This document shows, piece by piece, positions 12,401-63,684 of a DNA stretch of 64,000 nt. The translations under genes and the position numbers were made by a program. This stretch comes from Diadema antillarum (Eukaryota): contig NW_027271014.1 in assembly GCF_040938485.1 (NCBI RefSeq), forward strand, positions 2,294,001 to 2,358,000, read 5' to 3'. A model generated the notes under the pieces. The model did no database searches, was not told the DNA's origin, and worked only from the letters and a program-made list of their open reading frames with translations. Every line of letters begins with the position of its first letter. Positions within the stretch are counted from its first letter, which is position 1.

Positions 12401-15400
12401 TCAGATTTCTATGCAACCTGCCCTCTCTCATTAACGTTTGACCTTTGCAGAACACATCCTTGACCTTTACCTCAGACACGTTGGCCAGGACCAGAGTGTT
12501 GAGCATGGACCTGAGACTCTTCAGACAGGTCTGTTTGAGTCCATCCAGGACCAGGGCATCCATGTGGTCCACGTATTCCTCCCAGGCAGGGGAGGCCCGG
12601 CTGATCTGGACGACCTCAAAGCTGTTCTGGAGCAGGGCGTGGATGCGCAGGCCTGACGGCTTGATCAATCGCTCAATCTCGTCATCAAGCTCTCTGTGTG
12701 TGTAGTCAGAAAAAGGACAGTTAGAGAAGTGATAAAAGTACATATTATAAACAACAATATGGCAATGAAAGTAAAGATTAACAGAAAGATAATAATCACT
12801 TACCACCATCAGCAGCAGCAGCATTTTCATCAGAACAACAAAATACAATAAAACACAATATGGAATTATCAAACATGGCAAAATTGTTAAACTAACATGA
12901 CTTCAAGAGGCAAAAGCTATATGTCCATCCGCCCCCTTCTTTTTTTCTTTTCAATGTAAAGGGATAATGTGACTCTGTTAAGAAGATATGGGTTCAATGG
13001 TTGTGTAGCAATAACATCCTTTCAGTCTTTGAGAAGACATGTGGGGTTCCAAGTTTAATGACATACAATGCATTGAGAATGAAGCACAGTTTCAAAAAGC
13101 AAAATGTAATACTCTTCAAGTATTGTCCCCTGACCTTTGCCAATCCAGGAGTCTGTTCATGGAGTAGCTCAGCGAGGGCAACCTGCACTCAAAGACGTCC
13201 AGCGCGCCGCTTGACCACTTCTGGGTGACCTCCACCATCTCCTGGCAGTTAGACTGGACAATGGCCAGTGTCCGGTGGAGGTCAGCACCGACCAGGGCTG
13301 AAGCCAGCTCGATGAAGTCAGCACTCTCTGTCGTCTTCCATGTGTAGTGGTTCAGGCCTTGCTCCAACAACTGAATGGAATTATAATTGAAAAGACATGG
13401 TAAAGTTGGTGGCCCATTCAAATATGTAAGAAACTCTTTTAACATTCTCTCGTGAACATTATGCCTCCTTATCTAGCAATATTGGTGGTGATTTAGAACC
13501 AAGTTTACAATTTTGTGAGGAGCATACGAATGGTGATGCATTCAAAAGACACATGCATTTCATATCATATGCGAGTTTTCATGCCTGCATTCATACCTAT
13601 TCTTTTTTTTTTTCAGTAAATATCATCAGAGCATTTCTTATTCCTAAACATTGTTCCAAAATTTCTTTTTACAAGAAAAACATTTCATGAAGAATTGTGG
13701 AAAAATAAAAAAACAAAACTGCCACTTATTATACATTATAGTATTCTGCTGATACATATGCCCTTCTGTGTTCACTAGAAACTTGCAAAGTGGGAAAGTA
13801 GGCAGCAAAACAAGATCTAGCTGGAAGGCAGTAATATAACTCACATGGTCAATCTTGCCCAGCTTGCGCTCAAACAGCGGCCTCTCAAAGTCCACAATGG
13901 AGCGCATAGCCTGGTTGTACTTGGAGACGATGGTCTCCAGACGGGCAGCCGTGGTGCGCAGCGTGGCCCCATCGGTGTGTCGCAGCAGCTCCCTGACGCC
14001 GTCTGGCAGCTTGACGTTGAAGGGCGCCTGGGCCAGGTAATGGACCTCACGGAGCAAGAGCAGGAGCTCTGGGTCCAGGTTGACGTGCAACACTTGGGGC
14101 CTGAGCTCAGTCTCTTCGTCGTAGTCCTCAGCAGTCTGTAACAGCACAAAGATTAACACATGGCACATATACATACCACCATACTTGTAAGCATCAATGC
14201 ACAGTTGAACACCTTTTAATGTTTTACAAAAAGTTCACTAAGTGCAAAAATTATCATTTCCTTTTCTACACATTGAGATAAAATTATGCCCTGTCCAAAA
14301 ATATTCTTCAAATTGCACTTTCTGTATTAAAAACTTGGTTTGTCCAAGTAAATGTGTTCAAAAAAGTAAGAATTCATCCAAAAGAGAAAAAATAGAAGAC
14401 ACTTGACTGTGATAATGCAGTATTCACACTAATCCAGCCACCCACCAAATTGTACAAGCTTATAATGTACTTAGAAGCAGAGTGAATGCACAAAAACTAA
14501 TCAAACTAAAGATTGCTAATAAGGAGAGCTTATTAACTGTTTTTTCCCAGTGGTACAATAAAATGCACTAACCAGTAAGGGCTGTTTCAGTCTGTCCCTC
14601 AGTTCAGCGTGTAACATACGCTGCCAGTCACTGACACTCTTTGCCTCGTACTTATCCAGGTCACTCATGGTGTCATTGAAGACGTCCCTCAGATGCCAGC
14701 CAGCATCCCCGTCCAGGGAGTGTGGACTGATCCTCCTCAGTTTCTCCATAGGTTCCTGAAGGAAAAACAAGATATTCCACTTCAGTTGAGGAGGGGGAAC
14801 ATATTGAGGGTGAGCATATTTCTACAGTGTGTACATCACTTGCGTGATTTATACTGAGCTTCACAGAAAAATATAAATGTGATCTTGCTGGAATAATGAA
14901 ACATTCAATTCCTCCTACTAAGACAGCACTAAAAAACCAACTTCAACGAAGTATTAACACTGTGGGAACTTAGATAAGTTAATGTTAATCATGAAAGCCA
15001 GCTTTAGAAGAGAAGTAAAGAAAGGATTGATCACTAATAACATCAACTAAGTGTTTGTTTTTCCCCTTTTCTTGTACACCAATTGGACAACAAATTAATA
15101 GCCAGGCTTGAATCTACACTTCTGCCTGAAAATTGGCATCCCTGATAAGATAATCTCACCTTTATCCTCTTCTTCAGGGCTCCGACCCAGGTCAGCTTAC
15201 AGACGATGGGAGGAAGGTTGGCATGGAGTGGAGGTTCCTGGGACTTGGCGATGAACATGGTGCGCACGGCGATCAGCTCATTGGTGAAGGAGCTGATCAG
15301 GGCCTGGTCCTTGTCCTTGAGGTATTCCTGGACCATCTCCCGACCGCTCACCCCCTCAAAGACCTCCAGGAGGCGTAGCTGGGAGCCGATGGTGGGGCAC

Positions 15401-47965: not shown

Positions 47966-50900
47966 GTGTGTTGTGTGTGTGGAGGACAGGGATACACGGA
48001 TACACTTACTGAAATACCGTGTCTTTGCGTTAGTTCCATTTGGTAAAGGTGTCTTTACACTTCTCATGAATCAATGTGAGCTTCTGAATTCGTTTATATG
48101 AATTGTGTAATTCCTAGAACATGCAAACAAAAGAAAATGATGAAAAATAATCAAAATATAGAATGAAGGCTTATCAACTCACCGCATCATTCTTATGTTA
48201 TCAGAGAATAAATGATAAATGCAATAAAGAACATGATTACTTTATTCTGCATGGAAAATAATGTTACAGTCAAATGATCACATTATGCGACCAAAATACG
48301 CTGCAGGCATGATGACATTATAGAAGATAAATTCTTCGACATGACAAAAAACTATACGAATGCATTAACGAGAGAGGTGTAGCATTGTTTGAAAACACGA
48401 TTGGAGTCTGAAGTATTCAGATGATGAATAACGCTCATTTTACAAACTGATAATGTCAATATTAAACTGTTCAACGTCAACGCTTCCTTCCATCACAGTC
48501 TTCGCTGCCGTTGGGCATCATACAACGCTTGGAAGATTTGGAGGACCGTCACCAGAAAATCATCCAGAATGCAAAATCTCAGCATCGTGCGTTCATAAGC
48601 AAGATAAGAAAGGAACATGCTGCCTTGATGAAGTATGACGTAGAGACATTGGTGGACGTCATCACCTCCAGCCTTCCGCACAGGGAAGACAGCGATCTGC
48701 AGGTCTTACGGGACAAAATGCGGCAGGACGGTGAAAACCTGCACTGGATGCTGCATGAAATTAAATGGTCTACCACAGCAGGTCCTACTAGTCCGCCAAG
48801 TGAGGAAGTTTCGCGAATTATGGATAACCTCCTTCACCTCGAGCAAGAGACCATCGAGGCGCTGATAAATAATCATTACGAAGTCATGAAAACAGAGCTA
48901 GGAAACGGAAAAGCCATCAGACACAAAATCATCCAAGGAAAAAAATCAGGAGTCGTTGAGACAGTGCCCGCCATGTCGAGATGGCGTATTTATCAGTGGG
49001 AGCTGTCTGTTCTTACGCGGCTGCTTGACGATCATCTGAAGTACCAGAAGGCCGAAGAAGCATGTGTAAAAACAATGAACACATTTCTACACATGCAATA
49101 CCATGCGCTCCAAAAGGACAGACGCCTTGCAGAAGTCGACTTAAAGCTGTACGATACATGCCTGAGAAGCCATTACGAGGTCATGCTACAGGTAATGACT
49201 TCACTAAACGACGTGTTTCAAGATTGCAGGAAAGGCCTTGACATGCCACCAATTTACTGGCGCCAGAAAGATTCTCCACTCAACGTCATGAGAGATATTC
49301 TTTGCTTAGGAAAGAGAGCACGAGAATACGTAATGAGGGCTGAGAGTGAGCATCGCGACGTCGTCATCAACTTCGATGCCAAGAACAAAGCTGTCGTGCA
49401 AGGTGAGCTGTTTCCGGAGAGCGCAAGTTACCGTAAAAAGTGGGACGACGTCCATTACGCTGAGCGGGAGGAGCAGTACCTGAAGGAGATGAAGAAACTC
49501 TCAAGAGACACGGAAAGGAATGTTCAGATGCTTTCCGAGAAGATTGCCGCAGAAAGGGCAAGTCCTCAAGGAGTACGTATGTATGATATAGGCCTATGTG
49601 CAAAGTTCTTTAATCAGATAATAACATAAGGTTCGTTATCAGGAAAATTCGTTATGCTGAAACATACAAATTACATATACCTAAGTGTTTGTAGCCCCAA
49701 AATGAAAAAAGGGGTTCTTTAATCCAAGTATTTGTAGCGTTATTCCGGAGGTTTCTCAATCTGAAAATGATACAAAAAAAAAGAAGAATCCGGAATTACA
49801 AACCCTATTAACGAACCTCTGGAATAACAATGTTTATTCTTTCATTTTTGGGATTAACGAATATTCAGACTTACTAACTGACGTTATTTCTGTTTCGGAT
49901 TTACGAACCTTCGGAATAACGAACTGTAACCTTCCTTACATTATCATCATAATTATGTAAAGGTTGTCAGTGGTAAACGAGATTTATCGGTGGTAGGGTA
50001 TTGATCACCTGTTCAATACCGATTGAGTATTCTCTCTGCATGACAAAGGCAACCAACAATTCAAAGAGAATTATGCCTAAATGTATAGGAAGACTCAGTT
50101 ATTGAAGCAACATTAGCATACATTCGTGAACTTTGAGGTAAATGCCAATTATTCGTTTAAAAGTTACAAATCTGCAGTGTTTTGGTGGTGCCATCGCTTG
50201 GTAAAAAGTCAGCAGTTCATGACGTCACTACAAGACAGTAAAACAAACAATATAGTCATAAAGAGAATTCTCTTTCACAAAATGTCATTTTGTTTTGAAA
50301 GATAAACGTTCCCCCGTCTTGCTATTGATAAGTGTTAGGGCAATAATCCTACTGCTTTCTTAAAGTGGTTGGTCAAGTGCTATTCCATTACGCCAGAAAA
50401 AAAAAAGAATATTGTTGTTTTGTATTGATAAAAAAAAAACTTTTTAAAAATTGTCACATATTCTTTACATATCTATTCGTTGAATTCGTGCACATTGGCA
50501 TCATCCCCCTCAATTATGTCAAGTCAAGAACAAATCCGCACATGTTGCCTGACATATAGGAGCAGAATATACAAATTCGTTTATTGCATGGTTCATTACT
50601 CCAGGTAAAGTAATCCCACTCCAATTTTGCACTCACAATTTCAAAACAACTGTGTGTTTTGTTTGTTTGTTTGTTTTGTTTTGTTTTTGTTTTTTTTTTG
50701 GGGGGGGGGGGAGGGAGGGCACAATGTTTTGAAGCTTCCGATCAATGTCTCCAGTGAAGTGAGCTTAGTCGTTTTGAGCTCACATAAACAAGCAACCCCA
50801 AATAGATAAACAAACAAATATAAAGACAACAAAACCAAGCAAGGATATAATTCACCAAACGCAAACGTGGATATGATTTTGCGTGGTTGTGCTCATGAAA

Positions 50901-53900
50901 ATAAATTTTGACGAGGATTGCTGTACAATTATTGTTTAAAGTGTGTACTTAGCAGTTCATGTGTTCTGAATTGACCTAAAGGATACCAAAGACTTGTACA
51001 TGAAACTAAGATACAGCATTTGTTCTGGTTTCACACCTCAGGTATCACGTGGATATGGCGGCAGCGACATAGCGGAGCTCTCTCTCGAAGACGGGCCGCT
51101 CGCTGACATCCTGGCCGAAGAATGTGAGAAATTTCCCGATCGCGTAGAGTTCGAAGTTGATATTCACGATCGCGATATCTCGTTGGACTGTCTCAACCAT
51201 GCTGTCGTTGCAAAGCAGCTTCCAGCTCTAAAGATCTTAAGTCTGAAGACAAACGCAGATCTCATGAGACTCGGAGATCTGATCGCCGCCCTCTCTATCC
51301 TTTGCCCCGGGATGACAGAGCTGAATATCGAAGCGAGTAAGATTAAGACACGGTACTCTCAAGCATTGCAGCTGCATGCTCTTTTTGGGCAGTCCTCATT
51401 GATGAATCTTCGCCTCAGTACCGAGTCTTTTCTCGACTACGTACACCTAATGAAGTTGATAGCATTTGTGTTGCCTACACTGTAAAAAATTTGTTTAGTT
51501 TCTAAACACCTAACTAAACACTTTTCTGTGACAGTTTAAAAACACTGCGACGTGTTTATATATTAAACATGTTTATGAACTAAACACATGCTGTGTTTAT
51601 TTTCAGCACACCCTAGGTGTTTATCACACACACATGTTTATGTTTTAAACGGTTCTGATGTTTAAAAACTAAACACCTGCTGTGTTTATAGCCTAAACAC
51701 CAAACGTTTACACCGTAATCACTCACAGTGTTTAAATACTAAACACCGCACAGTCACATAATCACCCACAATGTTTAAGATCTAAACACTGAACCAAAAA
51801 ATAAACATGACGCACTGTTTACGATGTAAACACTGCGACATGTTTATTCGCTGTGACAGATTAAAAACACTGCGACATGTTTATTTGCCATTCTAGTGTT
51901 TATTTTCAGAACACATGTCTGATTTTTAGATCGATCACAAAATTGCATACACTAAACATGTGACATGTTTACATATTAAACATCGCAATTTCTCAGTGTT
52001 TATATGATACATGTTTACACCTTATACATGCCGAGTGTTTATATGAGACATGTTTACACATCATACATGGTAATTTCCACGTGTTTATATGAGACATGTT
52101 TACACATCATACATTCATACATGCTAATTTCTACGTGTTTAAATGAGACATATCATCATGCATGTTAATTTCCATGTATTTATTAATGTAAAGTGGATTG
52201 TTTCCACTTTTTTTTGCATGGAATAAGATAAACGCATAACATTATATAGAATTTACCCAGTATGTACCAAATCATTAGCACACTTACATCGCATAATACC
52301 AGGGAAGACCTGGGTTAGCTTTCACAAACATTTTGGCTACAAGAGTTAAAGGCAATTCTCTGAATGCAAGTTATCAAAACATCAGTCAAAGCTTGGGCAA
52401 TATCTGATGAATAATATAAGTTAAAATCCTTTAAAGGGGAAATCGAGTCCAATAAACAAGTCTGATAAAAAAGAGTAAAACCTTACCAGTTTAACAGTAA
52501 AAATTTGAATGAAATTGGATGAAAAATAAGGAAGTTATCAAATGAAGATTTGCTAATTTCTGCCAAGCAGTTAAAAGTGGATATGAATATGCAAATGAGT
52601 GTGTTGACCATGCCATAACCTCACAATTTTCCATTGATCGCGTACCCCCCAAAAAACGATGAAATTCAATGTTTATGTTAATGAAATGTGAAACATTATG
52701 GTATTGCTGGTTGAATAACTTCAGAAAATTGATCAATTAGATATATCAGGACTTGAGCCTCGGGAATAATTGCGTTTGAATGAAAAACTTGAAATTAAGT
52801 AAGTTGTGAGGGAATGACATACCCACGTTGCCATTTGCATATTCATATCAACTATTCAAGAATTGTTTCCTCAAAAATTAGCGAAACTTCAAAATGTCAT
52901 AACTTCCTTATTTTACATCCGATTTCGATCAAAATTTTACCAATGAACTCTTAATATTTTATTTTTTCTTATCAGACTAACTTGTATTTGGACTGGATTT
53001 CCCCTTTAAATATTGCCATGTTATTGCTATACGACACAATACTGAGTTAAATGCAAGATACCTGGGAGTCACTGGCCTGTACGAAGACGTAAATGGAATT
53101 CTCTCCTATACACACAGTAAAGTTTGTATTTGCAGGAAATGACACATAACTCATTTTGGAGAAAAAAAAATATTGCATTTAACAATTACTTTTCAGTCAC
53201 ATGTAATTCTTAGCCTACTTTCAAGAATTGCCGTCTTTCTACTGTATTCAGAACTAATTCTTAGTATTGTAAAACAAACGAATAAACTTGTTGATTGTGA
53301 ATTGCAACTCAACGCTTCGGAAGCTTGACATGTATGTAACACCTCCAGGAACATAACTGCAGTCTGTGAACAAATCGATGTCGACCTTGAAGATTGCATC
53401 AATTATTGACAAAGTGCTTTGGGGTGTACCCGAACCAAATTAGGCTCACGGCAAATTATACAATGCACAACACTATGGTCGTATTGGTACTGATCAGGGA
53501 GTGTAGATGATGCACTCATCATAAAGAGACCCCCCCCCCCCCCACCAAAAAAATAAAATAAAAAAAATATAAAAAAAATAAATAAAAAATGTTTTCACTG
53601 TATTTAGCCTGTGGTGAACATCTGCACTCCCTGATCAGTACCAATAATGGAATTTAAATACATACATGATATTGTTCTTTTCACTGCGACGTCCACTGAA
53701 AGTACATGTAGGCTAACAGTACTGTATTGATTTTTCACTTTTGCTATTTCGGGAGAAATCTTAGAATGTTAGTGGTTTTCAAAAGGTGAGTGAGAAAAAA
53801 CTTCTACCTTGCTAGAACCTTGGAGAAAGAAGTCAAACTCAATGGGTATACATGAATAGTCTATTAGAGTCTAATCAGTCTCATCATACTCCACATAATC

Positions 53901-56900
53901 ATGGTATGGAGGGCTACTTTCAATCTCGACACAGCAGAATTTTTGGTAAAGACAAGAGGATATGAACAAAGAAAAAATAATGCATTGCAACTGGAGGGGG
54001 GAGGGTATGCAAGGCTGTCATGAACACGCGATGTGATCAGCAAGACTCCTCCCTTGTCAATTTGTCAGTCAGTTGCAAGACTCCTCCCTATTCTCCATGC
54101 ATGTTGTACTACATTTCTGATACCTCTCTCCATGTGACAGATTTCAAGAATATCTCAGAAAGAAACTATTAACTACCGAATGCTGCATTTCCTATCAGGT
54201 CTACAGGAAAATTGCAAAGAATTCCAAACAAATGCAACTACTGGCCTCTTATTTGCGTCCAATATCTGCTGATTGTATTTGAAGCACCTGAGGGAAAAAA
54301 AAGAAATGGCTGATATTTTGATTTGATTTGTTTTGATTTCTATATTCCTTTTTGCACAAGAATATAACAGAAAGCCAATCGAACAAAGTTCTTGAGTAAT
54401 ATATTAACAGTGAATTACAAGGATATTGGTTGATGAATAAAATGAAGTGAATAAAACTGTTTTTCTTAGTAGTGCAAAACGATTTCGAGCAAGTGTCTTT
54501 ACATAATAGATAACATTACAATTTTACGTACCAGCTGTTAAAATAAGACAATTACACATATCTATCAGCAATAAGAATACAGGTGACCATTATCGTAAGC
54601 ACAGAGGACAATAGAATCGCTTTGTTTTGGATATCCCTGCCATTTCAAAACCAATTTTCATCAAATAAGCATTGAATTCCTCTTCGAATTATATAGGCCC
54701 CCTACCTTCATATTTCTTTAGAGGTTCGTCATTATGTAATACACGCATACACGCACACGGAGAACTGAAGCCCCAGCACATTCAAACCCCTATCAACCCC
54801 CATATGATTTACTTTATTCTAGTATACAGGTTTAGATGCACACTGTCAGTGAAGAAAAAAAAAAACAATAAGAAGGTTGCTCTAACAGGTGGGATGCCTC
54901 CTAATAGGTCTGTAGTGCATCATGACGATGTGAGACATCACATGGCTAGCGGGAAAAAGATTGTTAACATTCAAAATCATTATCCATGGTTCATTTCCTT
55001 CATATGGCATGTAGGCCTATAGATATACTGTATATCAGTATATCTTGCGATGTCCTTGTAATCCTCAGATGTTTGCACTTTTAGACGGGTTGTATAGAAG
55101 TAAGCGCATGCATCTTTCATTCTAATCCAGACAGGTTTGGCGTGATCCCCGATCAATTCTTCCATGACGTACTGGTGCTGGTAAAAAGAAATGATTACAC
55201 AAGGAAAACAAATCAGTTGGCTTTGCAATACAATGGACTTAACTGCTCCCATAGATTCTGAAAATGAATGGATAGCAAAAAGTTGACTGAATCCATAAGC
55301 AAGTTCAAATTAAAAGGAATGACAGAATCCCTTCATCACATTAGCACATAGTGTCTTGCGTCAGTTTTTACTTACTCTGCTGAATTTTCTGGAAATAATT
55401 CAAGTCTTTTTGTTGTTGTTTCTTCTTTCTTATTCATCATCATTATCAAGCAGAGTTACGACCATACTGTATCCTTTGTCTCTTGGGTGAAGATTTTCAC
55501 ATCTGTAACTTACACTTTCAACAATATTTGCAATAAATAAAATTTCCATGTCTATTTTAGCTAATGGATTGAATTCGGGAGTCGGGAGTAGGTAATCCCC
55601 CCCCCCCCCCCTTAAAAAAAAAACACACACACACAAACAAAAGAAGTTAAAGCATCTAAAATCTGCATTTTATAGAAACTCATTTACATACTCTTTAAGT
55701 ACATAATATTCATTGATTTGGCCCTGCAATTTTGAGTACTGACTTACTTGATTTCCAATTTCCACATGGGCAGTATACAGTGATGTACTATCCCCAGTCG
55801 ATTTACTCTGCTGACTACACCATGCCTCGTTCTCTGCCAGCAGAGGTAATGTCTTGCAGGATTCATACAGTAAACGTCAGGACATCATCGTCACCCACTT
55901 TGGTGCCATCGCCATCCCCTTCCAAGACATCCTAATGGGCTTTACATTCAATTTTCACCACCTGTTGAGTGAAGAATTTACAGGGAATAAAACTGAATTT
56001 CACTCAAAATATAGTCACTAACCCATCGTCATTCACATGAAAGATACTTCATAACTTCGTAAAATTAAAGATACAGTGAGTTTACCCGCTGGGCCGAGTT
56101 TACCCATAACTACGGTACCGGTAATTTGCAGAGTGTAGGCCTAGATATTGTAACGTTAACAACACTAACACGTTACAGGTAGAGCGTTCCCCGTTCTAAC
56201 GTAACTTAGTCGTTAGATTTAGAAATAGAAAACTAAAACAAACGAGCAAAATCTTTAAGGGCGTAGCTTATTTCCACGCCTACAACAGTTTTACATTAAA
56301 CGAGGGCGATTTTGCAATAAATCTTGTTATTCACCGACTTAGCTGACTTAGCAGACTCACCGCTTTCATGCAGGCCGGCCAGGCTAGAACTTTATCCCTT
56401 CGACGCCATCTTAGCTAGATCCGCTCCTTTATGCAGTGCGGCATGCAGTCAGCAGTGCAGTCAATCGAGTCGTAAGTGCAGTGTGTGGACGACCAAGCCT
56501 AGAACGAATGCGCACGTACTGTAGGCCTACGCACATCACGCTGCTGGGGCATGCAATCGCAGCACCAGCCAGCCATTCAGACAGATCCATCCGTACAGGT
56601 ACGTACGCGCGTGCACATCTCCTTTCCCGCCAATTGTGCATTGATTATGGTCATAATCATGCATAGCACGAGTGGGCGCTAGAAGCGCACGCACAGGGCA
56701 CCACTGCGTGCGTTGTGGCCGCGGCCGTCATGTCACAATACATGCGCTGCTGACTTGTAGAGTACGAGTATAAGTGTTTATGTTAAACATGTGCGGTGTT
56801 TAGAACGTGTTTACGAGGCGTTCTAAATGTAAACGCGTCTGTTTAATCCTGACAGTAGAAGTGTTTAGGCCTAACCAACAAACATTTGGGTTATGCCCTA

Positions 56901-59900
56901 AACCATGAACGAAATCATTAACAAAGGCAACTCCCATTTTTTTCTAGCAGTTAAAATATAGGACTGTACATGCGAAACCAAAATATAAATTTATTACAGT
57001 TTTATTACATATTTTTAGGTTATCCTTTTTCCTTATTGATTAGGCATTTCCATGAAAGGCCTAAAACATGAATTATTTCATAGTGCATCTTGATGTCGTA
57101 ACAGTTTCCACTTTCTCGTGATAAAAGGAAACTAGAAATTGCAATTTACACACCATTTCCAACACTTCTCCATGTATATATGGACATATTGAGATTAACA
57201 TAACGTGACCAGAATAAACACTCCAACTAAACACTCCAAGCTAAACACTTTAACTCTCAATACTTTACACGTGCTATACACACCGGGTGTTTAGATGTTA
57301 AACAAAGTGTTTAGATTTTTAACACTGTGTTTAGTTCATAAACATGTCGCATGTCGCATTTTTTACAGTGTACTTTAAAGGTACTGGATATTCATGCCAA
57401 TTCACTGTTCCTGCATCCGAGCCAGGAATTCGCCGAGATACAGGCCACAGCAGTAAGGGTGCTTACGGTGTCTTGGCAGTCATACACTGATGGTTTGGAA
57501 CAACTCGTTCCTCTCATCCTGGCGGCGTGTCCGAATTTAGGGCTGCTTTTCCTGAAGGGTTCTGCCTTCTATCATCAATTCGTCGACTTTGAAGCCACTT
57601 CGCGCAGCCTGACCGGCCTCAACGTACTGTCAGTGACATCCAGTGAGAAGGAAATTGCAAAAGAGGTCCTTTCCAGACTCAGGACGTCATTATGTCCACA
57701 CCTACTGCCTCCGAAGCTGGTGGACAATGTGTACATCATGTGTGCCAAGTCAACAAGACCAGGTAAGGACAGTTGATAGTGCAGAGTTGGCGGGGTAAGG
57801 GATGATCTGGTTCATGATATCATTGTTCGTATTTCTCCTTCTATTACGTTTAAAGCACGCTTTAGATGTTGTTTTGAACAAGAAAGACACACGTTACACG
57901 CTTCGTCCAAACAAAATTTTAACCAGCATGTTAATTTCTGTACATCCAGAGATTCACGCTTTGGAACCGCATACGACTTTCGCAGAAACTTTCGATCAGA
58001 AGGGAGGAACCCTCGAAATATATCGTTACGGCTTCACTCTCTGTATTCCTCCCGGCGCTCTGGAAACAAGCACTGGCATTTCTATCAGGGTTCTGACAGA
58101 CCTTCCCCGTCAACTGGACTTGCCGGAAGACGAGATGGCGGTCAGTTTGGGCTTCGAGTGTTTTCCTTCGGATATTCACTTTCTCAAACCACTCAGACTG
58201 ACCATACCACACAATGCTGTACTCATCGACCCTGGCCGAGTTAATGCGGTGCTGTATTCTGGCAAGTCTAGTGAAGACAGTGAGTATAACACCAACATTT
58301 TTTCACCAATAAGTGCATAATAATGATAATATATCCATAGTGACATAGTGCAGCTTGGCTAAACTCTCACGATCATATATACAAAGGCCATCACTTCACA
58401 TTCAATATTCTCTTGCAATAGCTGTCTTTTTTGGTAAAAAGAGAAGAGATAAAAAAAGAGAGAATATATTGGAAGGGGATGCCTCTTAATTTTGGGCAAT
58501 TAGCTTTGAAAATTTTGTCTATGATGTGACCTGATGGTGTGTATTATGATTTTGTGTAATCAAAGATGGCGATTTGTCGAGGGAGTTGCTGCGCCCTCGT
58601 CGTTGTGTTGTAAAGAGAGATCATCTGGAGGTGATGCTCGACCACTTTTCCTTTGGATTCGTGACTATACTGTACGACTGGCTGTTTGTGAAGAGCAAGC
58701 GCATAGCTTGTACGCCATTCCTTCCTAAAGTCTGGTCAAGCAAGCAGGCGATCCTCCATTTCCGCGTTTACGACCAACTCCAAGGAATGTCGAAGGTTNN
58801 NNNNNNNNNNNNNNNNNNNNNNNNNNNNNNNNNNNNNNNNNNNNNNNNNNNNNNNNNNNNNNNNNNNNNNNNNNNNNNNNNNNNNNNNNNNNNNNNNNNN
58901 NNNNNNNNNNNNNNNNNNNNNNNNNNNNNNNNNNNNNNNNNNNNNNNNNNNNNTGATACGTCTATCTCAATCTCTTGAAATGTCACTCCTTCACGAAAGT
59001 ATTCACTTTTACTGTATCTGAAAATCAACGGAACAGTCATTAGGTCTACTGCCTCAAGGGATAATGGTTGTACTCACATGGTGGTGTCATTTTTCTTTCT
59101 TTTTTTTTGCATGGAATGCCCATGGTACCGCTAAATCATTCAAGTATACTGCAGTGATCATTCGACAATGTTTTTTTTTTTTTTCATTATTCAGCTAATT
59201 CTGAATCGATATCACAGAGCACTCATTCAAAAGACAACTTTTTCTGGAGAGCACTACGGGGTGGGATGTGGGTCTCTCCTGTTTGTTTGTTTGTTTGTTT
59301 GTTTGTTTGTTTTCTTGTCATCTCAATGGCTTTCCCGAAGATAAGACGGACCAGGCAGGCAACATTCAGTTAAGCCTCATTCTAGACTAATGTCATGACT
59401 ATGTGTTTTAGAAGATAAGACGCATTTCCACTTACGCATGATAATGATACAGTTAGACAGTGTTTTAAGGTCGATGATTTCTGCAGGATATTGTTGAGGA
59501 GGAAGAACAGATGGGATACAAAAAGGTGAGCCCCGAGGAGGAGATTCGTTTGAGTACTGATGGCAAGGATCTACGCATTAGATGTCAGCTGTCGGGATCT
59601 CCTCATGTGCAAGAGAAGGTATACATCTCTCTGTCAAAACAAAACAAAACAACATAAAACAAGACAAAGTATACAAAAAACAACATTTATTGGACAAAAC
59701 AAAGCATAACACAAAAATACATATCTATCAGATTATTTTTTCTCTTTTTGTCTTCCTTCTCATCGTAGTATTGCTAGTGGAAAAAATAAATAAATCGTGC
59801 TCATTTTTTTTTTTTGTCTTATGCCAACGTAGTGCACTGTGGCCTATGACTTATATTTGAATAAACTCACGTCATGACTTTTGAGTGTGCAATAATCTTA

Positions 59901-62900
59901 CATTGTAACATGAATAAAGATCATATCACCATGTAAGGAAATGCGAGATAAGGATTAATGACAAGAAAGAATTGGAACTGATTGACATGAATATGAAAAA
60001 CAAGAATTGTTTGATGAAAAAAAAAACTGTACACAGAGTAAATAAAATGATCATACGCGGCAAGTATTTTTTACTGTCTGTGTGCTAAGGGTCTGTTATT
60101 GTTCATAATTATGACACTACATCCTACGTCTCCTTTTTTATCATGTGTTTTATTATGGGAATTTGCGTATCTGCTGTCTTTCACAAACGTCTTGATACAA
60201 CGCAGATAATCAGTTACAGAGATCTCTGCGAAATCACCAAGCGAACTGTTTCTATCAACCTGGATGTGGCAGGATTAGAGCAGCCCAATGCTCTCGTCAC
60301 CCTAACTTTGGAACAGGACTCGTCACTTACAATCTTATTTCGGACAGGTTATGCAGGTACGATATACTCTGCCATATCATACCTAATTTTGCAAGTGTAA
60401 GAGGAGAAAAGGCTGGACAGGTTTGCTAGTTTCACCTTTGAATGTGAATATTCTTTCTCCGAGACCACGATAACGCAGACTATTATGTTAATTTCCCTCC
60501 GAGTATGCAAGACGGTTTGCACGCATCGATTATTGCTGTGTCGCTTGGTAATCGGGCAGACTTTCAAGGTGTTAAGTATACAGAACGTTTGAATATGTTG
60601 ATTAACCGGCTGTTAAATTCCTTACTTACTAGCAGTACTAAATTTGTAAACGTACATTTTATCAGGGGCCTGTATATATCGCCCAATTTTTTTTTTTTAA
60701 CGGTAAAGACCTTTTGCCCCTCTCTTTTTGGTATAAATCAAGCAAAGTTGGGGGATCGTGATTTTTCATACATGGACACAAAACTTTGGAATATCCTTCC
60801 AAAATCACTTCGACAAGCATCTTTTATTGATGCTTTTAAAAATAAACTCAACACCTACATTTTCAATTTAATTAGAAATATTTTATCCTGTATGTACCTA
60901 AATGGGCGTATATTGTTTGTTTGTTTATTGTTCTTATATCTTCTGTGCTACTATGTTGTAACGTGATACATTTTATGTATATTCTGTTCTACAGCGCCAT
61001 GAGTATCTTTTTGAGGTAGAACGAGCGCTTTATAAGAGTCTCTCTTTTATGATTATCTTAACTATAATTTCAATTTCAAAATTTGATTTCAATTTCAAAA
61101 TTTGATTTTAATTTCAAAATTTGATTTCAATTTCAGTTTGAATCTGTAATACCAAATCAAGTAAATAGTAATCTACTCTGACACAATGTGGTTTTGCTCC
61201 AGTAGCATGAACCAGCTTCAATATAATTAACCAGGATCCTTTCGTGTGTGTGTGTGTGTGTGTGTGTGTTTCATGAAAATTCATCAATTCCGGAATATTC
61301 GGGCAAAGATTGTCAGATGTTAATTTTCTTTTCGAAATCTGCCGACAAATTTTCAGCTTACCGTTAGAATCCTTCATATTTCTCAGGTTTTTTGCTCTGT
61401 TCATCACAATTATCAGCATTTATGACAGTGAAATTCCATTAAATCTGTACACGTATTCCTTTCGTTACTTTCGATACTTTGTTTTCAAGTTATGTATTTT
61501 ATATCATCGTATACTATAACAATGATGCTACCTTTGAGAATTCGGAAATAAACGAAAATGATAAACAGACTGAACTGAAACTGAACCTGATGTTTGTTTA
61601 TATGTGACTCTGCACCTCAAAACAAACAAAAAGTCGCCAGACATGAATTTTTAGTTAAGACCATATTCTGAAAGAGCAGACTTTAAGCTTTAAAATGATG
61701 TATAATTCAAATCAAATGGACTCTCCTAACATATCTAAATTTTGGAAAGAAAGCACAAACTCAGGAAAAGTGTGAACTGAGAAAAGAGGCTCTGAAGTAC
61801 AATGTTTATTCAAGCGCATAATCTTTACCAAACCGTGCTGGCTGTGCGATGAATGGGACAAAAAACAGGAAGTAAACCACCAGAGTAACAACAATGAAGG
61901 GATTATCAGATTAAGCTGAAATTAAGCATGCCTCATTAACACATTCTGTCCATAATTAATGCCAACTTTCAAAGCAGTAGCACTATCCTTTCAAAGGTTA
62001 TTAGAGTTGAAATTGAAGAGCGTGGACAAGGTTTTTCAGATATGAAAAAGGGATTCTAAAGACACACCTGATCACACTATTCTACCAAAAATGTTCGAGA
62101 TAAACTGCTAAAAAAAAACACACTTTCCTGCCCGTTTTATGATACCAAATTTTAGCATAATGTAAAAGAAGACCCGCTCTTTCAGAAAATATGAAAAAGT
62201 CAAGTTCGGCTAGGTTGACCCATTTCACTTAATTTCAGTCCTCACGCAAAATCAGTGTGTGCGACTTAATGTTCGTTTTGAGGTGCACTGTCACATATAC
62301 TCACCATAGTCTACACATATGGTTTGAGAGTGTTTAACTTTCACAAAAAACAAAAGAAAAGCAACAAAAAAAAAAACGGGTACTATAGTAAGTATATTGG
62401 TAAAGCGTGGCTGGAGTATTACGACACTGAAAACGTTTCATAGGGAGAAAAAAGCGATTACCATAATCAAACCAATTATGATCGTTGTTATCGAATAGTG
62501 ACGATTGACATTAGTTTTATCACGCCAAACTCTCTGTCTCAGCAATGCTTTTCTCCATGATTAAAAGTCCTTAAACCTCAAGTACTGTGACCTACACGCA
62601 TATTCTATGATGACATCTATCATTACTATTCTTCGTAACTTTTTTATTTCTTTACGTCAGAACCTTCACAGGCAACCAAAGAAGTCGATCGTAAAGGCTC
62701 TCTACATGTTCCATGGGATATCCAGGGAAGCGATAATTATCCATTGTCATGGGCAAGTTATATCGAAGACAAGAGGCTTCCAGAATCTCTCAGGCAGTTC
62801 CTTCAAGAACAACATCCACCGACGCCCGAGGCTGTAAAACTAGTTTCACCAAGGTGTGTCACAATGAAACAACATCTGTTGAGAGATGATGATGATGGTA

Positions 62901-63684
62901 GTAATGATTATATAACATCGATGATGGAATACTTGTAGCAGCAATAAAAACAACAGCATTTTGAAATATATAACGTATATTACAATATTGATAATGACCA
63001 TTAAATAGTGCCGATTTACCTATGGAAGCAAAATAATCACAAGCACTATTCCTTTACCATTTTCTCTTATCATTAAAAAAAAAATACCATCAAGGTATAT
63101 AGTGTAGATTCATTTCGGGTGATGAAGGCATTGGCCTTTTATACATAAATTAAGTAATCATTCTAAAACTATGCATTTTTGTCATTACGTGCAGATTTCG
63201 GATGTGAATATGCATCCCACTTTAATTGACGATGCTTTTTCATGATTTGGAGCGTCATAGGGTGGTTTCTACAGAAAGTTAAGACCTGCTTTTCATGTCG
63301 AAATGTCGCAAGCCTGCCCTACGATACAGAAACTGGTGCATGTCCTAACTATTGTCTTTCAGGAGATTATTAATGCCTCAAAACTTCGACCTTGTGACCG
63401 ATGCCGAAATCGCCGACTTGTCTCCGCGGCTGCCTTCCAACAAGTTCATGATGGTTGGCGTACACCTCGGTCTGTCCAACGTCGAGGCCCAAAACATTAT
63501 GGATCGGGCCGAGCTAAGTCCCGAACTACGCTACATGACCATGCTGAACAAATGGAAAAGTCGGTTTGGTGGAGACAAGGAAGAATTGATGGAGGTTTTC
63601 AAAAAAGTAGGCCTGGGCGGTCTTTGCAGAGATGTACTGCGGAAGCGATCTTCCAAGATCTTGTCAAAAGGTCTTGAAGATTAG
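47619..63684 (+). CDS. Helical domain - LRR-like - ZU5 - UPA-like - death domain protein (PIDD/UNC5CL-like layout), about 1100 aa in 9 exons; exon 3 interrupted by a transposon, so this allele may be disrupted
   Basis: Phase-consistent GT-AG chain: 47619-47666, 48499-49572, 51042-51477+57373-57762, 57950-58279, 58566-58795, 59487-59618, 60206-60347 (or 60356), 62661-62853, 63363-63684. ZU5 and death-domain motifs are recognisable. Confidence 0.82.
47923..47980. repeat. (TG)n microsatellite
   Basis: direct reading. Confidence 0.9.
48499..49572 (+). CDS. ZU5-DD gene exon 2 (358 aa, helical/coiled-coil, unassigned)
   Basis: Longest ORF in the window; ccatcacag/ SSLPLGIIQ...ERASPQG /gtacgt, phase 0. 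Confidence 0.85.
51042..51477 (+). CDS. ZU5-DD gene exon 3, 5' part (LRR-like)
   Basis: cctcag/ VSRGYGG...LKILSLK...MTELNIE...LIAFVLP(T), cut by transposon after TA 51476-51477. Confidence 0.8.
52435..53005. mobile_element. Kolobok-like MITE nested in the CACTG element
   Basis: TTAA|AGGGGAAATCGAGTCCAA...TTGGACTGGATTTCCCCT|TTAA. Confidence 0.8.
53482..53646. mobile_element. small MITE nested in the CACTG element
   Basis: 28-bp inverted repeat TATTGGTACTGATCAGGGAGTG(T/C)AGATG. Confidence 0.6.
57373..57762 (+). CDS. ZU5-DD gene exon 3, 3' part (LRR-like)
   Basis: (T)LKVLDIH...LGLLFLK...LNVLSVT...STRP /gtaagg; in frame with the 5' part once the element and one TA are removed. Confidence 0.8.
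57950..58279 (+). CDS. exon 4, ZU5 domain
   Basis: FDQKGGTLEIYRYGFTLCIPPGAL...FECFPSDIHFLKPLRLTIPH matches the ZU5 GG.L...IPPGA...P....F.KP..L.IPH pattern; phase 1-1. Confidence 0.9.
58566..58795 (+). CDS. exon 5, end of ZU5 (HFS) and start of UPA-like region
   Basis: ...HLEVMLDHFSFGF...LHFRVYDQ; donor gtt directly before N gap. Confidence 0.8.
58799..58953. other. assembly gap (155 N)
   Basis: N run just after the exon 5 donor. Confidence 1.
59487..59618 (+). CDS. exon 6, UPA-like
   Basis: tttctgcag/ DIVEEEEQMGYKKV...VQEK /gtatac, phase 0-0. Confidence 0.75.
60206..60347 (+). CDS. exon 7 (alternative donor after 60356)
   Basis: cgcag/ IISYRDLCEITKRTVSINLDV...LFRT /gttatg or /gtacga, both phase 1. 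Confidence 0.7.
60730..61056 (+). mobile_element. 5'-truncated L2-clade LINE, 3' end
   Basis: KLGDRDFSYMDTKLWNILPKSLRQASFIDAFKNKLNTYIF resembles the L2 ORF2 C-terminus; tail CAGCGCC...GCGCTTTATAAG. Confidence 0.7.
61068..61134. repeat. 19-bp minisatellite (TTTCAATTTCAAAATTTGA)x3
   Basis: direct reading. Confidence 0.85.
62661..62853 (+). CDS. exon 8, linker
   Basis: long pyrimidine tract then cag/ PSQATKEVD...VSP /gtgtgt; phase 1 in and phase 2 out fit both neighbours. Confidence 0.72.
63363..63684 (+). CDS. exon 9, death domain and stop
   Basis: DLVTDAEIADLSPRL...VGVHLGLSNVEAQNI...MTMLNKWKSR...ELMEVFKKVGLGGL is a typical death-domain pattern; TAG at 63682-63684. Confidence 0.9.

What the first reader, a model, noticed from the sequence alone, without database searches (positions are those of the whole stretch)
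51476..57372. 5.9-kb DNA transposon inserted in a coding exon, with the empty site exactly reconstructable
Seen: removing 51478-57372 gives TTG CCT ACT TTA AAG GTA = LPTLKV, so the two ORF halves (...IAFVLPT and LKVLDIH...) form one LRR-like exon. With the element present, the TIR supplies a stop (CTG TAA, 51480-51485), predicting a protein of about 521 aa lacking ZU5-UPA-DD. All other exons remain open. Inference: a recent or still polymorphic insertion into a functional gene, or one tolerated by splicing. The nested MITEs more likely pre-date the jump.
Basis: partly seen in the sequence, partly recalled or inferred. Interest (0 to 1): 0.8.

Follow-up and report, generated by a model that had tools for sequence, protein, structure and literature searches.

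The report
Polymorphic transposon insertion in coding exon
A 5.9-kb "jumping gene" copy with no enzyme of its own sits inside a protein-coding exon on one chromosome copy, while the other copy, another individual and a sister species have the unbroken exon. It is a young, segregating knock-out allele, which is well documented here but an ordinary kind of event.

Summary
Window 51478-57370 (5,893 bp) is a cut-and-paste DNA transposon with 13-bp perfect terminal inverted repeats (CACTGTAAAAAAT) and a TA duplication at 51476-77 and 57371-72. It carries about 44 copies of a 7-nt subterminal motif and no protein domain.

It belongs to a young family. The genome holds 266 left ends, copies differ by 1.85% on average, and the nearest copy differs by 0.61%.

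A natural empty site exists in the same assembly, on contig C311, which is collinear with the window for at least 50 kb and is probably the other haplotype. There the exon is one 303-codon open frame.

Public contigs show:
- the empty site in one run of the same species;
- the empty site in two runs of a close relative;
- a contig in a second run of the same species that stops exactly at the junction.

The element puts a stop two codons in, upstream of the ZU5 and death domains. Splice-like signals in its ends would leave 8 extra bases and a frameshift. No RNA data were available.

All 27 frame-shifting indels between the two haplotypes lie outside the inferred exons, so the gene looks functional. 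The element's superfamily is unresolved (CMC-like or Tc1/mariner-like).

The parts
51476..51477 (.). Left copy of the TA target-site duplication
   Evidence: Read directly. TA precedes 13 of 16 left ends of other copies.
51478..51490 (+). Left 13-bp terminal inverted repeat CACTGTAAAAAAT. It holds the in-frame stop TAA at 51483-85.
   Evidence: It is the perfect reverse complement of 57358-57370. The 32-nt terminus occurs 266 times in the genome, control 0.
51491..52200 (+). Left subterminal region with 32 copies of the 7-nt motif TAAACAY/RTGTTTA (44 per kb, against 0.2 per kb in the element's middle and 0.4 per kb elsewhere in the window). Presumed transposase-binding sites.
52201..56750 (.). 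Internal part with no protein domain. It is a patchwork with MITE-like inverted repeats (for example 52430-53010 and 53482-53646) that is common to the family.
   Evidence: None of the 30 open frames of 51 aa or more has a credible Pfam match: 29 have none at E <= 0.1, and one has only a chance-level hit (Sox17_18_mid, E 0.019, 15.4 bits against a cut-off of 25). Full-length alignment to copies at C433, C1006, C87, C1148, C104 and C137.
56751..57357 (+). Right subterminal region with 12 copies of the same 7-nt motif (19 per kb)
57358..57370 (-). Right 13-bp terminal inverted repeat (ATTTTTTACAGTG on the + strand)
57371..57372 (.). Right copy of the TA target-site duplication
   Evidence: TA follows 11 of 14 right ends of other copies.
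51000..51477 (+). 5' half of the interrupted coding exon (...LMKLIAFVLPT)
   Evidence: Open frame 50970-51482. It is continuous with the 3' half in the empty allele, as a 303-codon frame at L057:1099-2007:-.
57373..57762 (+). 3' half of the interrupted exon (LKVLDIH...STRP), ending at the donor CAG|GTAAGG
   Evidence: It has no difference from the empty allele.
48466..49572 (+). Upstream large exon of the same gene (helical region, about 369 codons), with donor GTACGT
   Evidence: No Pfam match.
57951..58279 (+). ZU5-domain exon downstream of the insertion
   Evidence: Pfam PF00791 ZU5, E 2.2e-13, 50.7 bits. Splice sites read.
63349..63681 (+). Death-domain-like exon downstream of the insertion
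   Evidence: Pfam PF00531 Death, E 0.001, 19.6 bits, below the curated cut-off of 22.6.

Best explanation
A non-autonomous cut-and-paste DNA transposon of 5,893 bp inserted at a TA inside a coding exon of a ZU5/death-domain gene. It has 13-bp CACTG... terminal inverted repeats and dense subterminal binding-site repeats, and it has no transposase. It belongs to a recently amplified family of about 266 copies, which a transposase encoded elsewhere must mobilise. The insertion is on one haplotype only and is still segregating. The other haplotype in the same assembly, another run of the same species and two runs of a close relative carry the uninterrupted exon.

On the filled haplotype the reading frame runs two codons into the terminal repeat and meets TAA. 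That allele can at best make a protein lacking everything from the second half of the leucine-rich exon onwards (ZU5, UPA, death domain). Its message is probably removed by nonsense-mediated decay, so it is a loss-of-function allele carried in the heterozygous state.

Shown: the structure, the copy number, the TA duplication, the empty allele and the in-frame stop. Inferred: mobilisation in trans, nonsense-mediated decay and loss of function, and that the two contigs are alleles.
For: - Terminal repeats, TA duplication and stop codon were read directly.
- The genome holds 266 termini with 2 or fewer mismatches, against 0 for the control. At least 40 copies are 97-100% identical at each end.
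- Eleven other copies share the full internal structure. Mean pairwise divergence is 1.85% and the nearest copy differs by 0.61%. Only 12 substitutions in 5,845 are unique to this copy (0.21%). Non-coding divergence between the two haplotypes is 1.54%.
- Flanks of other copies give TA with a preference for C-TA-G.
- No credible Pfam domain in any of 30 open frames; the only hit at E <= 0.1 is a chance-level one, E 0.019 and far below its cut-off.
- The empty allele lies on C311, which is collinear with the window at four test points over at least 50 kb. It has a 303-codon open frame across the site.
- Contigs laid on the empty allele: X1 (same species) spans the site. X3 and X5 (close relative, two studies) span it at about 2% divergence. 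An X2 contig (same species, other study) aligns up to the base next to the site and then has 25 unmatched letters, as expected for a k=31 contig running into a high-copy repeat.
- X1 shows two 139-nt allelic contigs at depths 7.9 and 8.2 beside a 16.6-depth flank, one with C126 letters and one with C311 letters. This fits two alleles.
- Of 27 frame-shifting indels between the haplotypes, none lies in 2,543 nt of inferred exon (P about 5e-4). The one exonic indel is 3 nt.
Against: - No RNA data exist for the gene, so truncation and nonsense-mediated decay are inferred.
- pN/pS between the two haplotypes is about 1 (10 non-synonymous against 3 synonymous changes). Purifying selection on the protein is therefore not shown by substitutions.
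- The empty allele has TT where a TA target is required, so it is not the exact progenitor haplotype.
- That C311 and C126 are alleles rather than a recent large duplication is not proven. One test point (window 11400-12900) is only 78% identical.
- The letters of the X2 overhang were not displayed, so the filled state in X2 rests on the position of the break alone.
- The filled junction could not be seen in X1 because the loose-end table was truncated.
Confidence: 0.85

Rival explanations
1. C126 (filled) and C311 (empty) are not alleles. They are two paralogous copies from a recent large segmental duplication, and the transposon has hit one redundant paralogue. The insertion would then be fixed, not polymorphic.
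For: Both forms sit in one assembly. One collinear test point is only 78% identical, which is unusual for alleles. pN/pS of about 1 would fit a redundant copy.
Against: - The 1.75-Gb assembly in 2,963 contigs is about twice the size I recall for sea-urchin genomes. If they hold, they suggest that both haplotypes were assembled.
- X1 shows allelic contigs at about 8 each beside a flank at about 16.6.
- The relative's runs X3 and X5 show a single contig path across the region.
- The X1 contig mixes C126 and C311 variants, as expected of alleles collapsed or recombined at one locus.
- X1 lacks the insertion on the contig shown and X2 appears to have it, so the state varies between samples.
Confidence: 0.1
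2. The empty TT site on C311 is an excision footprint. The element once sat there too and left, so the empty form is derived from the filled form.
For: The empty site differs from the expected target at exactly one of the two duplicated bases. The X1 contig carries the filled haplotype's variants along the whole right flank up to the site and the other haplotype's variants on the left. Repair of a break from the homologue could produce that.
Against: - Trimming or hairpin-type repair of CCTA / TACTTT ends cannot simply give CCTTCTTT. Known footprints keep parts of both duplicated copies or element ends (established knowledge of Tc1/mariner and hAT/CACTA excision).
- Two further substitutions lie within 52 nt of the site (51425, 51439), and five substitutions, including the one at the site itself, lie in the 5' half of the exon. 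A plain polymorphism at the site is therefore unremarkable.
- The close relative has the empty state in two studies, so empty is ancestral.
Confidence: 0.05
3. The insertion is tolerated because the element is spliced out as a new intron. It would use the GT in the left terminal repeat (or a cryptic exonic donor) and the strong TTTTTTACAG acceptor in the right terminal repeat, so the filled allele would still make a near-normal protein.
For: The left end reads CACT|GTAAAA and the right end reads TTTTTTACAG|TG. A cryptic donor TTT|GTGTTG at 51468 joined to that acceptor would be in frame, replacing VLP by C (my reading). Maize Ds and dSpm exon insertions are known to be spliced in this way (established knowledge).
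Against: The splice pair supplied by the terminal repeats leaves CACT+TG+TA, which is 8 extra bases and a stop after five codons (sequence). The donor lacks G at -1 and at +5. The in-frame cryptic donor is weak. No RNA run holds the gene.
Confidence: 0.07

Closest known systems
En/Spm (CACTA) and the wider CMC / CMCT group (Mirage, Chapaev, Transib, and fungal ESTA = EnSpm-like transposons with TA duplications)
   Same: Termini 5'-CAC...GTG-3'. A short perfect terminal repeat of 13 bp, as in maize En/Spm from my own knowledge. Many short subterminal motif copies in both orientations over several hundred bp. A duplication within the 2-5 bp range quoted for the group, and specifically TA as in ESTA (PMC12730594; Chapaev hallmarks in PMC4079192).
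   Different: No transposase is present, so the defining C(2)C / H(3-4)H DDE domain cannot be checked. Classical CACTA and Chapaev elements make 3-4 bp duplications. ESTA is described from fungi, not animals.
IS630-Tc1-mariner superfamily and its non-autonomous derivatives
   Same: TA duplication. Preference for C-TA-G, the target known for bacterial IS630 (my own knowledge). Ends begin CA and finish TG.
   Different: Tc1/mariner ends usually hold one to three transposase-binding sites within longer terminal repeats. This element has a 13-bp repeat plus about 44 subterminal motifs. No DD(E/D) transposase was found to link it.
Transposon-insertion null alleles in exons (for example maize Ds/dSpm alleles of wx, bz and adh1, or Drosophila P-element alleles)
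   Same: A non-autonomous element lies in a coding exon and gives a premature stop. The allele segregates beside an intact allele. The element ends carry splice-like signals.
   Different: Here there is no phenotype, no expression data and no evidence of excision or splicing. It was detected only because both haplotypes were assembled.
Introner-like elements (DNA transposons that create new introns)
   Same: A DNA transposon in an exon with a GT near one end and a polypyrimidine-AG near the other.
   Different: Introners restore the frame exactly by using the duplicated target as part of a splice site. Here no GT...AG pair removes the element plus one TA. The available pair leaves 8 bases.

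Membership tests
Class II cut-and-paste (TIR) DNA transposon, non-autonomous | Terminal inverted repeats | tested here: met
   13-bp perfect repeat, 51478-51490 against 57358-57370.
Class II cut-and-paste (TIR) DNA transposon, non-autonomous | Target-site duplication of constant length at independent insertions | tested here: met
   TA on both sides here. TA at 13 of 16 left and 11 of 14 right ends of other copies. Paired loci (C433, C1006, C87, C1148) reconstruct a single TA.
Class II cut-and-paste (TIR) DNA transposon, non-autonomous | Many dispersed copies with the same ends, and an empty site | tested here: met
   266 termini, control 0. Empty site on C311 and in runs X1, X3 and X5.
Class II cut-and-paste (TIR) DNA transposon, non-autonomous | Absence of a transposase gene (non-autonomous) | tested here: met
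   The longest open frame is 117 aa. None of 30 frames has a credible Pfam match; the single hit at E <= 0.1 (Sox17_18_mid, E 0.019) is far below its cut-off. Longer copies owe their length to nested unrelated elements.
CMC / CMCT (EnSpm-Mirage-Chapaev-Transib, incl. ESTA) | 5'-CAC...GTG-3' termini and a 2-5 bp duplication | tested here: met
   CACTG...CAGTG with a TA duplication. Criteria from PMC12730594 and PMC4079192.
CMC / CMCT (EnSpm-Mirage-Chapaev-Transib, incl. ESTA) | DDE transposase with C(2)C and H(3-4)H motifs | not testable with these tools
   No autonomous copy was found among 14 copies fetched.
IS630-Tc1-mariner | TA duplication | tested here: met
IS630-Tc1-mariner | DD(E/D) transposase with paired-like helix-turn-helix domain | not testable with these tools
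   No transposase is linked to these ends in the sequence available.
Introner-like / self-splicing-out transposon | Splice sites placed so that the element plus one duplicated copy is removed exactly | tested here: not met
   The GT at 51482 and the AG ending at 57368 leave 8 extra bases. No GT...AG pair spans exactly 5,895 bases at the junctions.
ZU5 / death-domain protein (host gene) | ZU5 domain | tested here: met
   PF00791, E 2.2e-13, above the cut-off.
ZU5 / death-domain protein (host gene) | Death domain | tested here: inconclusive
   PF00531, E 0.001, 19.6 bits against a cut-off of 22.6.
   Neither exon half has a Pfam match at E <= 0.1. The L-rich periodicity is seen by eye only.

The most novel reading that the evidence does not exclude
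The family may be an animal counterpart of the EnSpm-like lineages that make TA duplications, so far named ESTA in fungi. It combines CACTA-style ends (13-bp CACT... repeat and dozens of subterminal motifs) with a strict TA duplication and a C-TA-G preference. On this reading it is still active in this echinoderm and is currently generating knock-out alleles in fast-evolving death-domain genes. Finding its transposase would define a new animal branch of the CMCT group.
Probability: 0.15. Interest if true: 0.45.

Novelty: new member of a known kind. Interest (0 to 1): 0.25.

Why it matters
The case shows, with both alleles in hand, that a DNA transposon family has been mobile within the coalescence time of present-day haplotypes in this animal. 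The copy's own divergence is at most 0.21%, against 1.54% between the haplotypes. The family creates segregating loss-of-function alleles in a ZU5/death-domain gene, a class that is much expanded in echinoderms.

It gives a ready PCR marker (filled against empty). It also gives a family of about 266 near-identical copies with which to look for ongoing transposition and for the missing transposase. As biology it is expected: exon-disrupting transposon polymorphisms are common in highly polymorphic invertebrates.

Tried and rejected
1. Transposase search inside the element. None of the 30 open frames of 51 aa or more has a credible Pfam match; the only hit at E <= 0.1 is Sox17_18_mid at E 0.019, far below its cut-off.

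2. Longer copies as candidate autonomous elements. Their extra length is nested, unrelated elements:
   - C557 (13 kb) holds a 6,565-bp transposon with its own terminal repeats, an AATT duplication and an 896-aa open frame that has no Pfam match.
   - Three copies (C557, L052, L041) hold a TTAA-flanked MITE or a longer insertion bounded by the same MITE ends.
   - C12 holds a fragment with a 313-aa open frame, apparently a retrotransposon.

3. A 557-bp segment missing from the C330 copy was tested as a late nested MITE. It is a deletion between short direct repeats.

4. RNA evidence. Two run searches found no run on record as RNA, so expression, nonsense-mediated decay and splicing stay untested.

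Collinearity was therefore tested by four coordinate-only searches.

6. A look-up of the open frame that starts in the right terminal repeat (57351-57773), tried as a marker of the filled junction in public assemblies, found nothing on record. That collection may leave out this genome.

7. Earlier scan notes were searched for the same ends or a matching transposase. Nothing usable came up.

8. The excision-footprint reading of the TT site was considered and judged unlikely (see rivals).

9. No consensus of the family was built or printed. Only counts of differences were computed.
Full report
**What is in the sequence**

The junctions read ...GTGTTGCC-TA|CACTGTAAAAAATTTGTTTAG... and ...GCATTTTTTACAGTG|TA-CTTTAAAGG. 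The element proper is 51478-57370 (5,893 bp). Its terminal inverted repeat is 13 bp and perfect (CACTGTAAAAAAT). TA stands on both sides, at 51476-77 and 57371-72.

Taking out 51478-57372 joins two open frames in phase, giving TTG CCT ACT TTA AAG GTA. With the element present the frame reads ACA CTG TAA, so the stop at 51483-85 lies in the terminal repeat.

**It is a member of a young, abundant, non-autonomous family**

- Each end finds about 300 candidate places in the window's own 1.75-Gb genome. The 40 scored are 97-100% identical.
- The 32-nt left terminus occurs 266 times with 2 or fewer mismatches. The reversed control occurs 0 times.
- Fourteen copies were fetched. Six align to the window copy from end to end. 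The others differ by one or two nested insertions or one internal deletion.
Those pieces pre-date this jump.
- Twelve copies differ pairwise by 1.85% on average. The nearest copy, on C433, differs by 0.61%.
- Only 12 of 5,845 positions are unique to the window copy, which is 0.21%.
- Flanks of other copies show TA at 13 of 16 left and 11 of 14 right ends. C precedes in 10 of 16 and G follows in 6 of 14, so there is a preference for C-TA-G. By my own binomial estimate at a base frequency of 0.2, the C excess has P of about 2.5e-4.
- The 7-nt motif TAAACAY/RTGTTTA occurs 32 times in the left 720 bp and 12 times in the right 620 bp. Its density is 0.2 per kb in the middle of the element and 0.4 per kb in the rest of the window. 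These are presumably transposase-binding sites.
- The longest open frame is 117 aa. None of 30 frames of 51 aa or more has a credible Pfam match: 29 have none at E <= 0.1, and one has a chance-level hit (Sox17_18_mid, E 0.019, 15.4 bits against a cut-off of 25).
- The longer copies are long because of unrelated nested elements.
- The element must therefore be moved by a transposase encoded elsewhere, which I did not find.

**A natural empty site**

The 528 bp left of the insertion match a second place in the same assembly, C311, at 99% identity. There the left flank runs straight into the right flank and the exon is a single 303-codon open frame.

The site reads CCT TCT TTA (LPSLKV). It has TT where the filled allele has the duplicated TA. 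This is one of five substitutions in the 5' half of the exon, counting the one at the site itself, and two of the others lie within 52 nt of the site. A target of TA is needed to give TA on both sides. The haplotype that was hit therefore carried TA, and the C311 haplotype is a different, never-occupied allele. Simple end-trimming or hairpin repair of CCTA / TACTTT cannot give CCTTCTTT, so I rate an excision footprint as unlikely.

**Alleles or paralogues**

C311 is collinear with the window at four test points over at least 50 kb, and the spacing agrees once the element is subtracted. Three of the points are 98-99% identical and one is 78%.

An earlier agent's note (s1-215047) calls this a sea-urchin genome. 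I did not verify that. If it is right, 1.75 Gb is about twice the size I recall for sea-urchin genomes, also unverified here, which would fit both haplotypes having been assembled.

**Public runs**

Contigs of four public runs were laid on the empty allele.

- **X1** (same species, the best holder and possibly the source sample): a 2,105-nt contig crosses the site. Beside it, two 139-nt contigs at depths 7.9 and 8.2 carry the C311 and the C126 letters respectively, next to a flank at depth 16.6. This is the pattern of two alleles.
- **X1, unexplained detail:** that contig carries all 12 C126 variants on the right flank, but the C311 letters at the site and on the left flank. It is either a recombinant haplotype or a product of bubble-popping in contig assembly. 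I leave this open.
- **X2** (same species, another study, low depth): a 719-nt contig aligns from 2194 down to 1501, the base next to the site. It then has 25 letters that do not fit the empty allele. A k=31 contig running from unique flank into a high-copy repeat would look like this. Nothing in X2 covers the 84 bases on the other side of the site. The overhang's letters were not displayed, so this is indirect evidence for the filled allele in a second sample.
- **X3 and X5** (a differently labelled organism, two studies, about 2% diverged): each has one contig crossing the site without the element. The empty state is therefore ancestral and the insertion is derived.

**Age**

The copy's unique divergence is at most 0.21%. 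Non-coding divergence between the two haplotypes is 1.54%. The insertion is therefore younger than the standing variation around it.

**The gene**

- Downstream exons match ZU5 (E 2.2e-13) and, weakly, Death (E 0.001, below the cut-off). The interrupted exon and the large upstream exon have no Pfam match.
- Donors and acceptors read off the two-allele alignment place all indels in introns.
- Of 29 indel events between the haplotypes, the 27 that would shift the frame all lie outside 2,543 nt of inferred exon (P about 5e-4). The single exonic indel is 3 nt. The frame is therefore being kept.
- Substitutions say nothing either way: pN 0.0050 and pS 0.0052, from 10 non-synonymous and 3 synonymous changes.
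- The figure of 'about 521 aa' is plausible but unverified, because the first large exon lacks a start codon near its 5' end.

**Consequence**

The filled allele ends at ...IAFVLPTL-stop, far upstream of later exon junctions. A truncated product or nonsense-mediated decay is expected, but this is inference.

The ends do look like splice signals (CACT|GTAAAA and TTTTTTACAG|TG). That pair would leave 8 extra bases and a stop after five codons. A weak exonic donor at 51468 could give an in-frame product. No RNA run holds the gene, so none of this could be tested.

**Comparison with known families**

TA duplications occur in Tc1/mariner-IS630. They also occur in EnSpm-like ESTA and in PIF-related PHISTA elements. 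The CMCT group is described as having CA..TG termini and 2-5 bp duplications (PMC12730594). Chapaev has CAC/GTG termini and 3-4 bp duplications (PMC4079192).

The 13-bp CACT... repeat with dozens of subterminal motifs is the En/Spm architecture (my own knowledge). The C-TA-G preference recalls IS630 (my own knowledge). Without a transposase the superfamily stays open. My odds are roughly 45% CMC-like, 35% Tc1/mariner-like and 20% other.

**Verdict**

This is a real, young, segregating exon-disrupting insertion of a new non-autonomous family. It is unusually well documented because both alleles were assembled, but it is an ordinary kind of event.

Noticed in passing
L042:3604-10168 (G000:C557, nested inside another copy of the family): A 6,565-bp transposon of a different kind. 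It has terminal repeats GGCCCAAAACCACTATTTCGG..., a 4-bp AATT duplication and an intact 896-aa open frame (L042:5652-8342) containing the motif QMDFAENY. No Pfam match. The Atlas feature search gives a mollusc 'hypothetical protein' cluster at 0.95 and DUF7869 clusters at 0.82.
   Followed up: partly
Element position 4216-4221 (window about 55693-55698); L041, L052 and C557 (L042 joined to L055): These three copies carry an insertion at this TTAA. In C557 (576 bp) and L052 (571 bp) it is a MITE with ends AGGACAAGTTCACCTTCATAAAC. L041 has a 4,149-bp insertion bounded by the same ends. This is either a TTAA hot spot or a sub-lineage that spread after the MITE landed. L053 also has an insertion at this position, of 831 bp, but with different ends (AGGGGAGAGCGGGG...), so that one is a different element.
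   Followed up: partly
L057:66-2167 (window 50810-51477 plus 57373-58806): The contig of run X1 that crosses the empty site carries all 12 variants of the filled haplotype on the right flank. At the site and on the left flank it carries the empty haplotype's letters. It is either a recombinant haplotype with a breakpoint within 415 nt of the site or an artefact of contig assembly.
   Followed up: partly
window 11400-12900: This stretch, with minus-strand open frames of 163-176 aa, matches the collinear position on C311 at only 78% identity. Other test points are 98-99%. It may be a highly divergent allele or a different member of a tandem family.
   Followed up: no
window about 61600-62295: A 695-bp segment present in the window is absent from the C311 haplotype. 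It is a second structural difference between the haplotypes, inside the same gene's intron region.
   Followed up: no
L044:2125-3592 (G000:C12 copy): A 1,468-bp nested insertion with a 313-aa open frame on the minus strand and a CAGTT-repeat end. It looks like a 5'-truncated non-LTR retrotransposon.
   Followed up: no
window 48466-51477: Ten of the 12 exonic substitutions between the two haplotypes in the upstream exon and the 5' half of the interrupted exon change the amino acid (the one at the insertion site, Thr/Ser, would make eleven), and there is one in-frame codon indel at 48947. The 3' half of the interrupted exon and the ZU5 exon have none. The variation is uneven along the protein.
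   Followed up: partly
window 60736-61070: A repeat of about 330 bp in the gene's intron region has more than 800 candidate copies in the genome at 79-86% identity. It is an older, unrelated repeat family.
   Followed up: no
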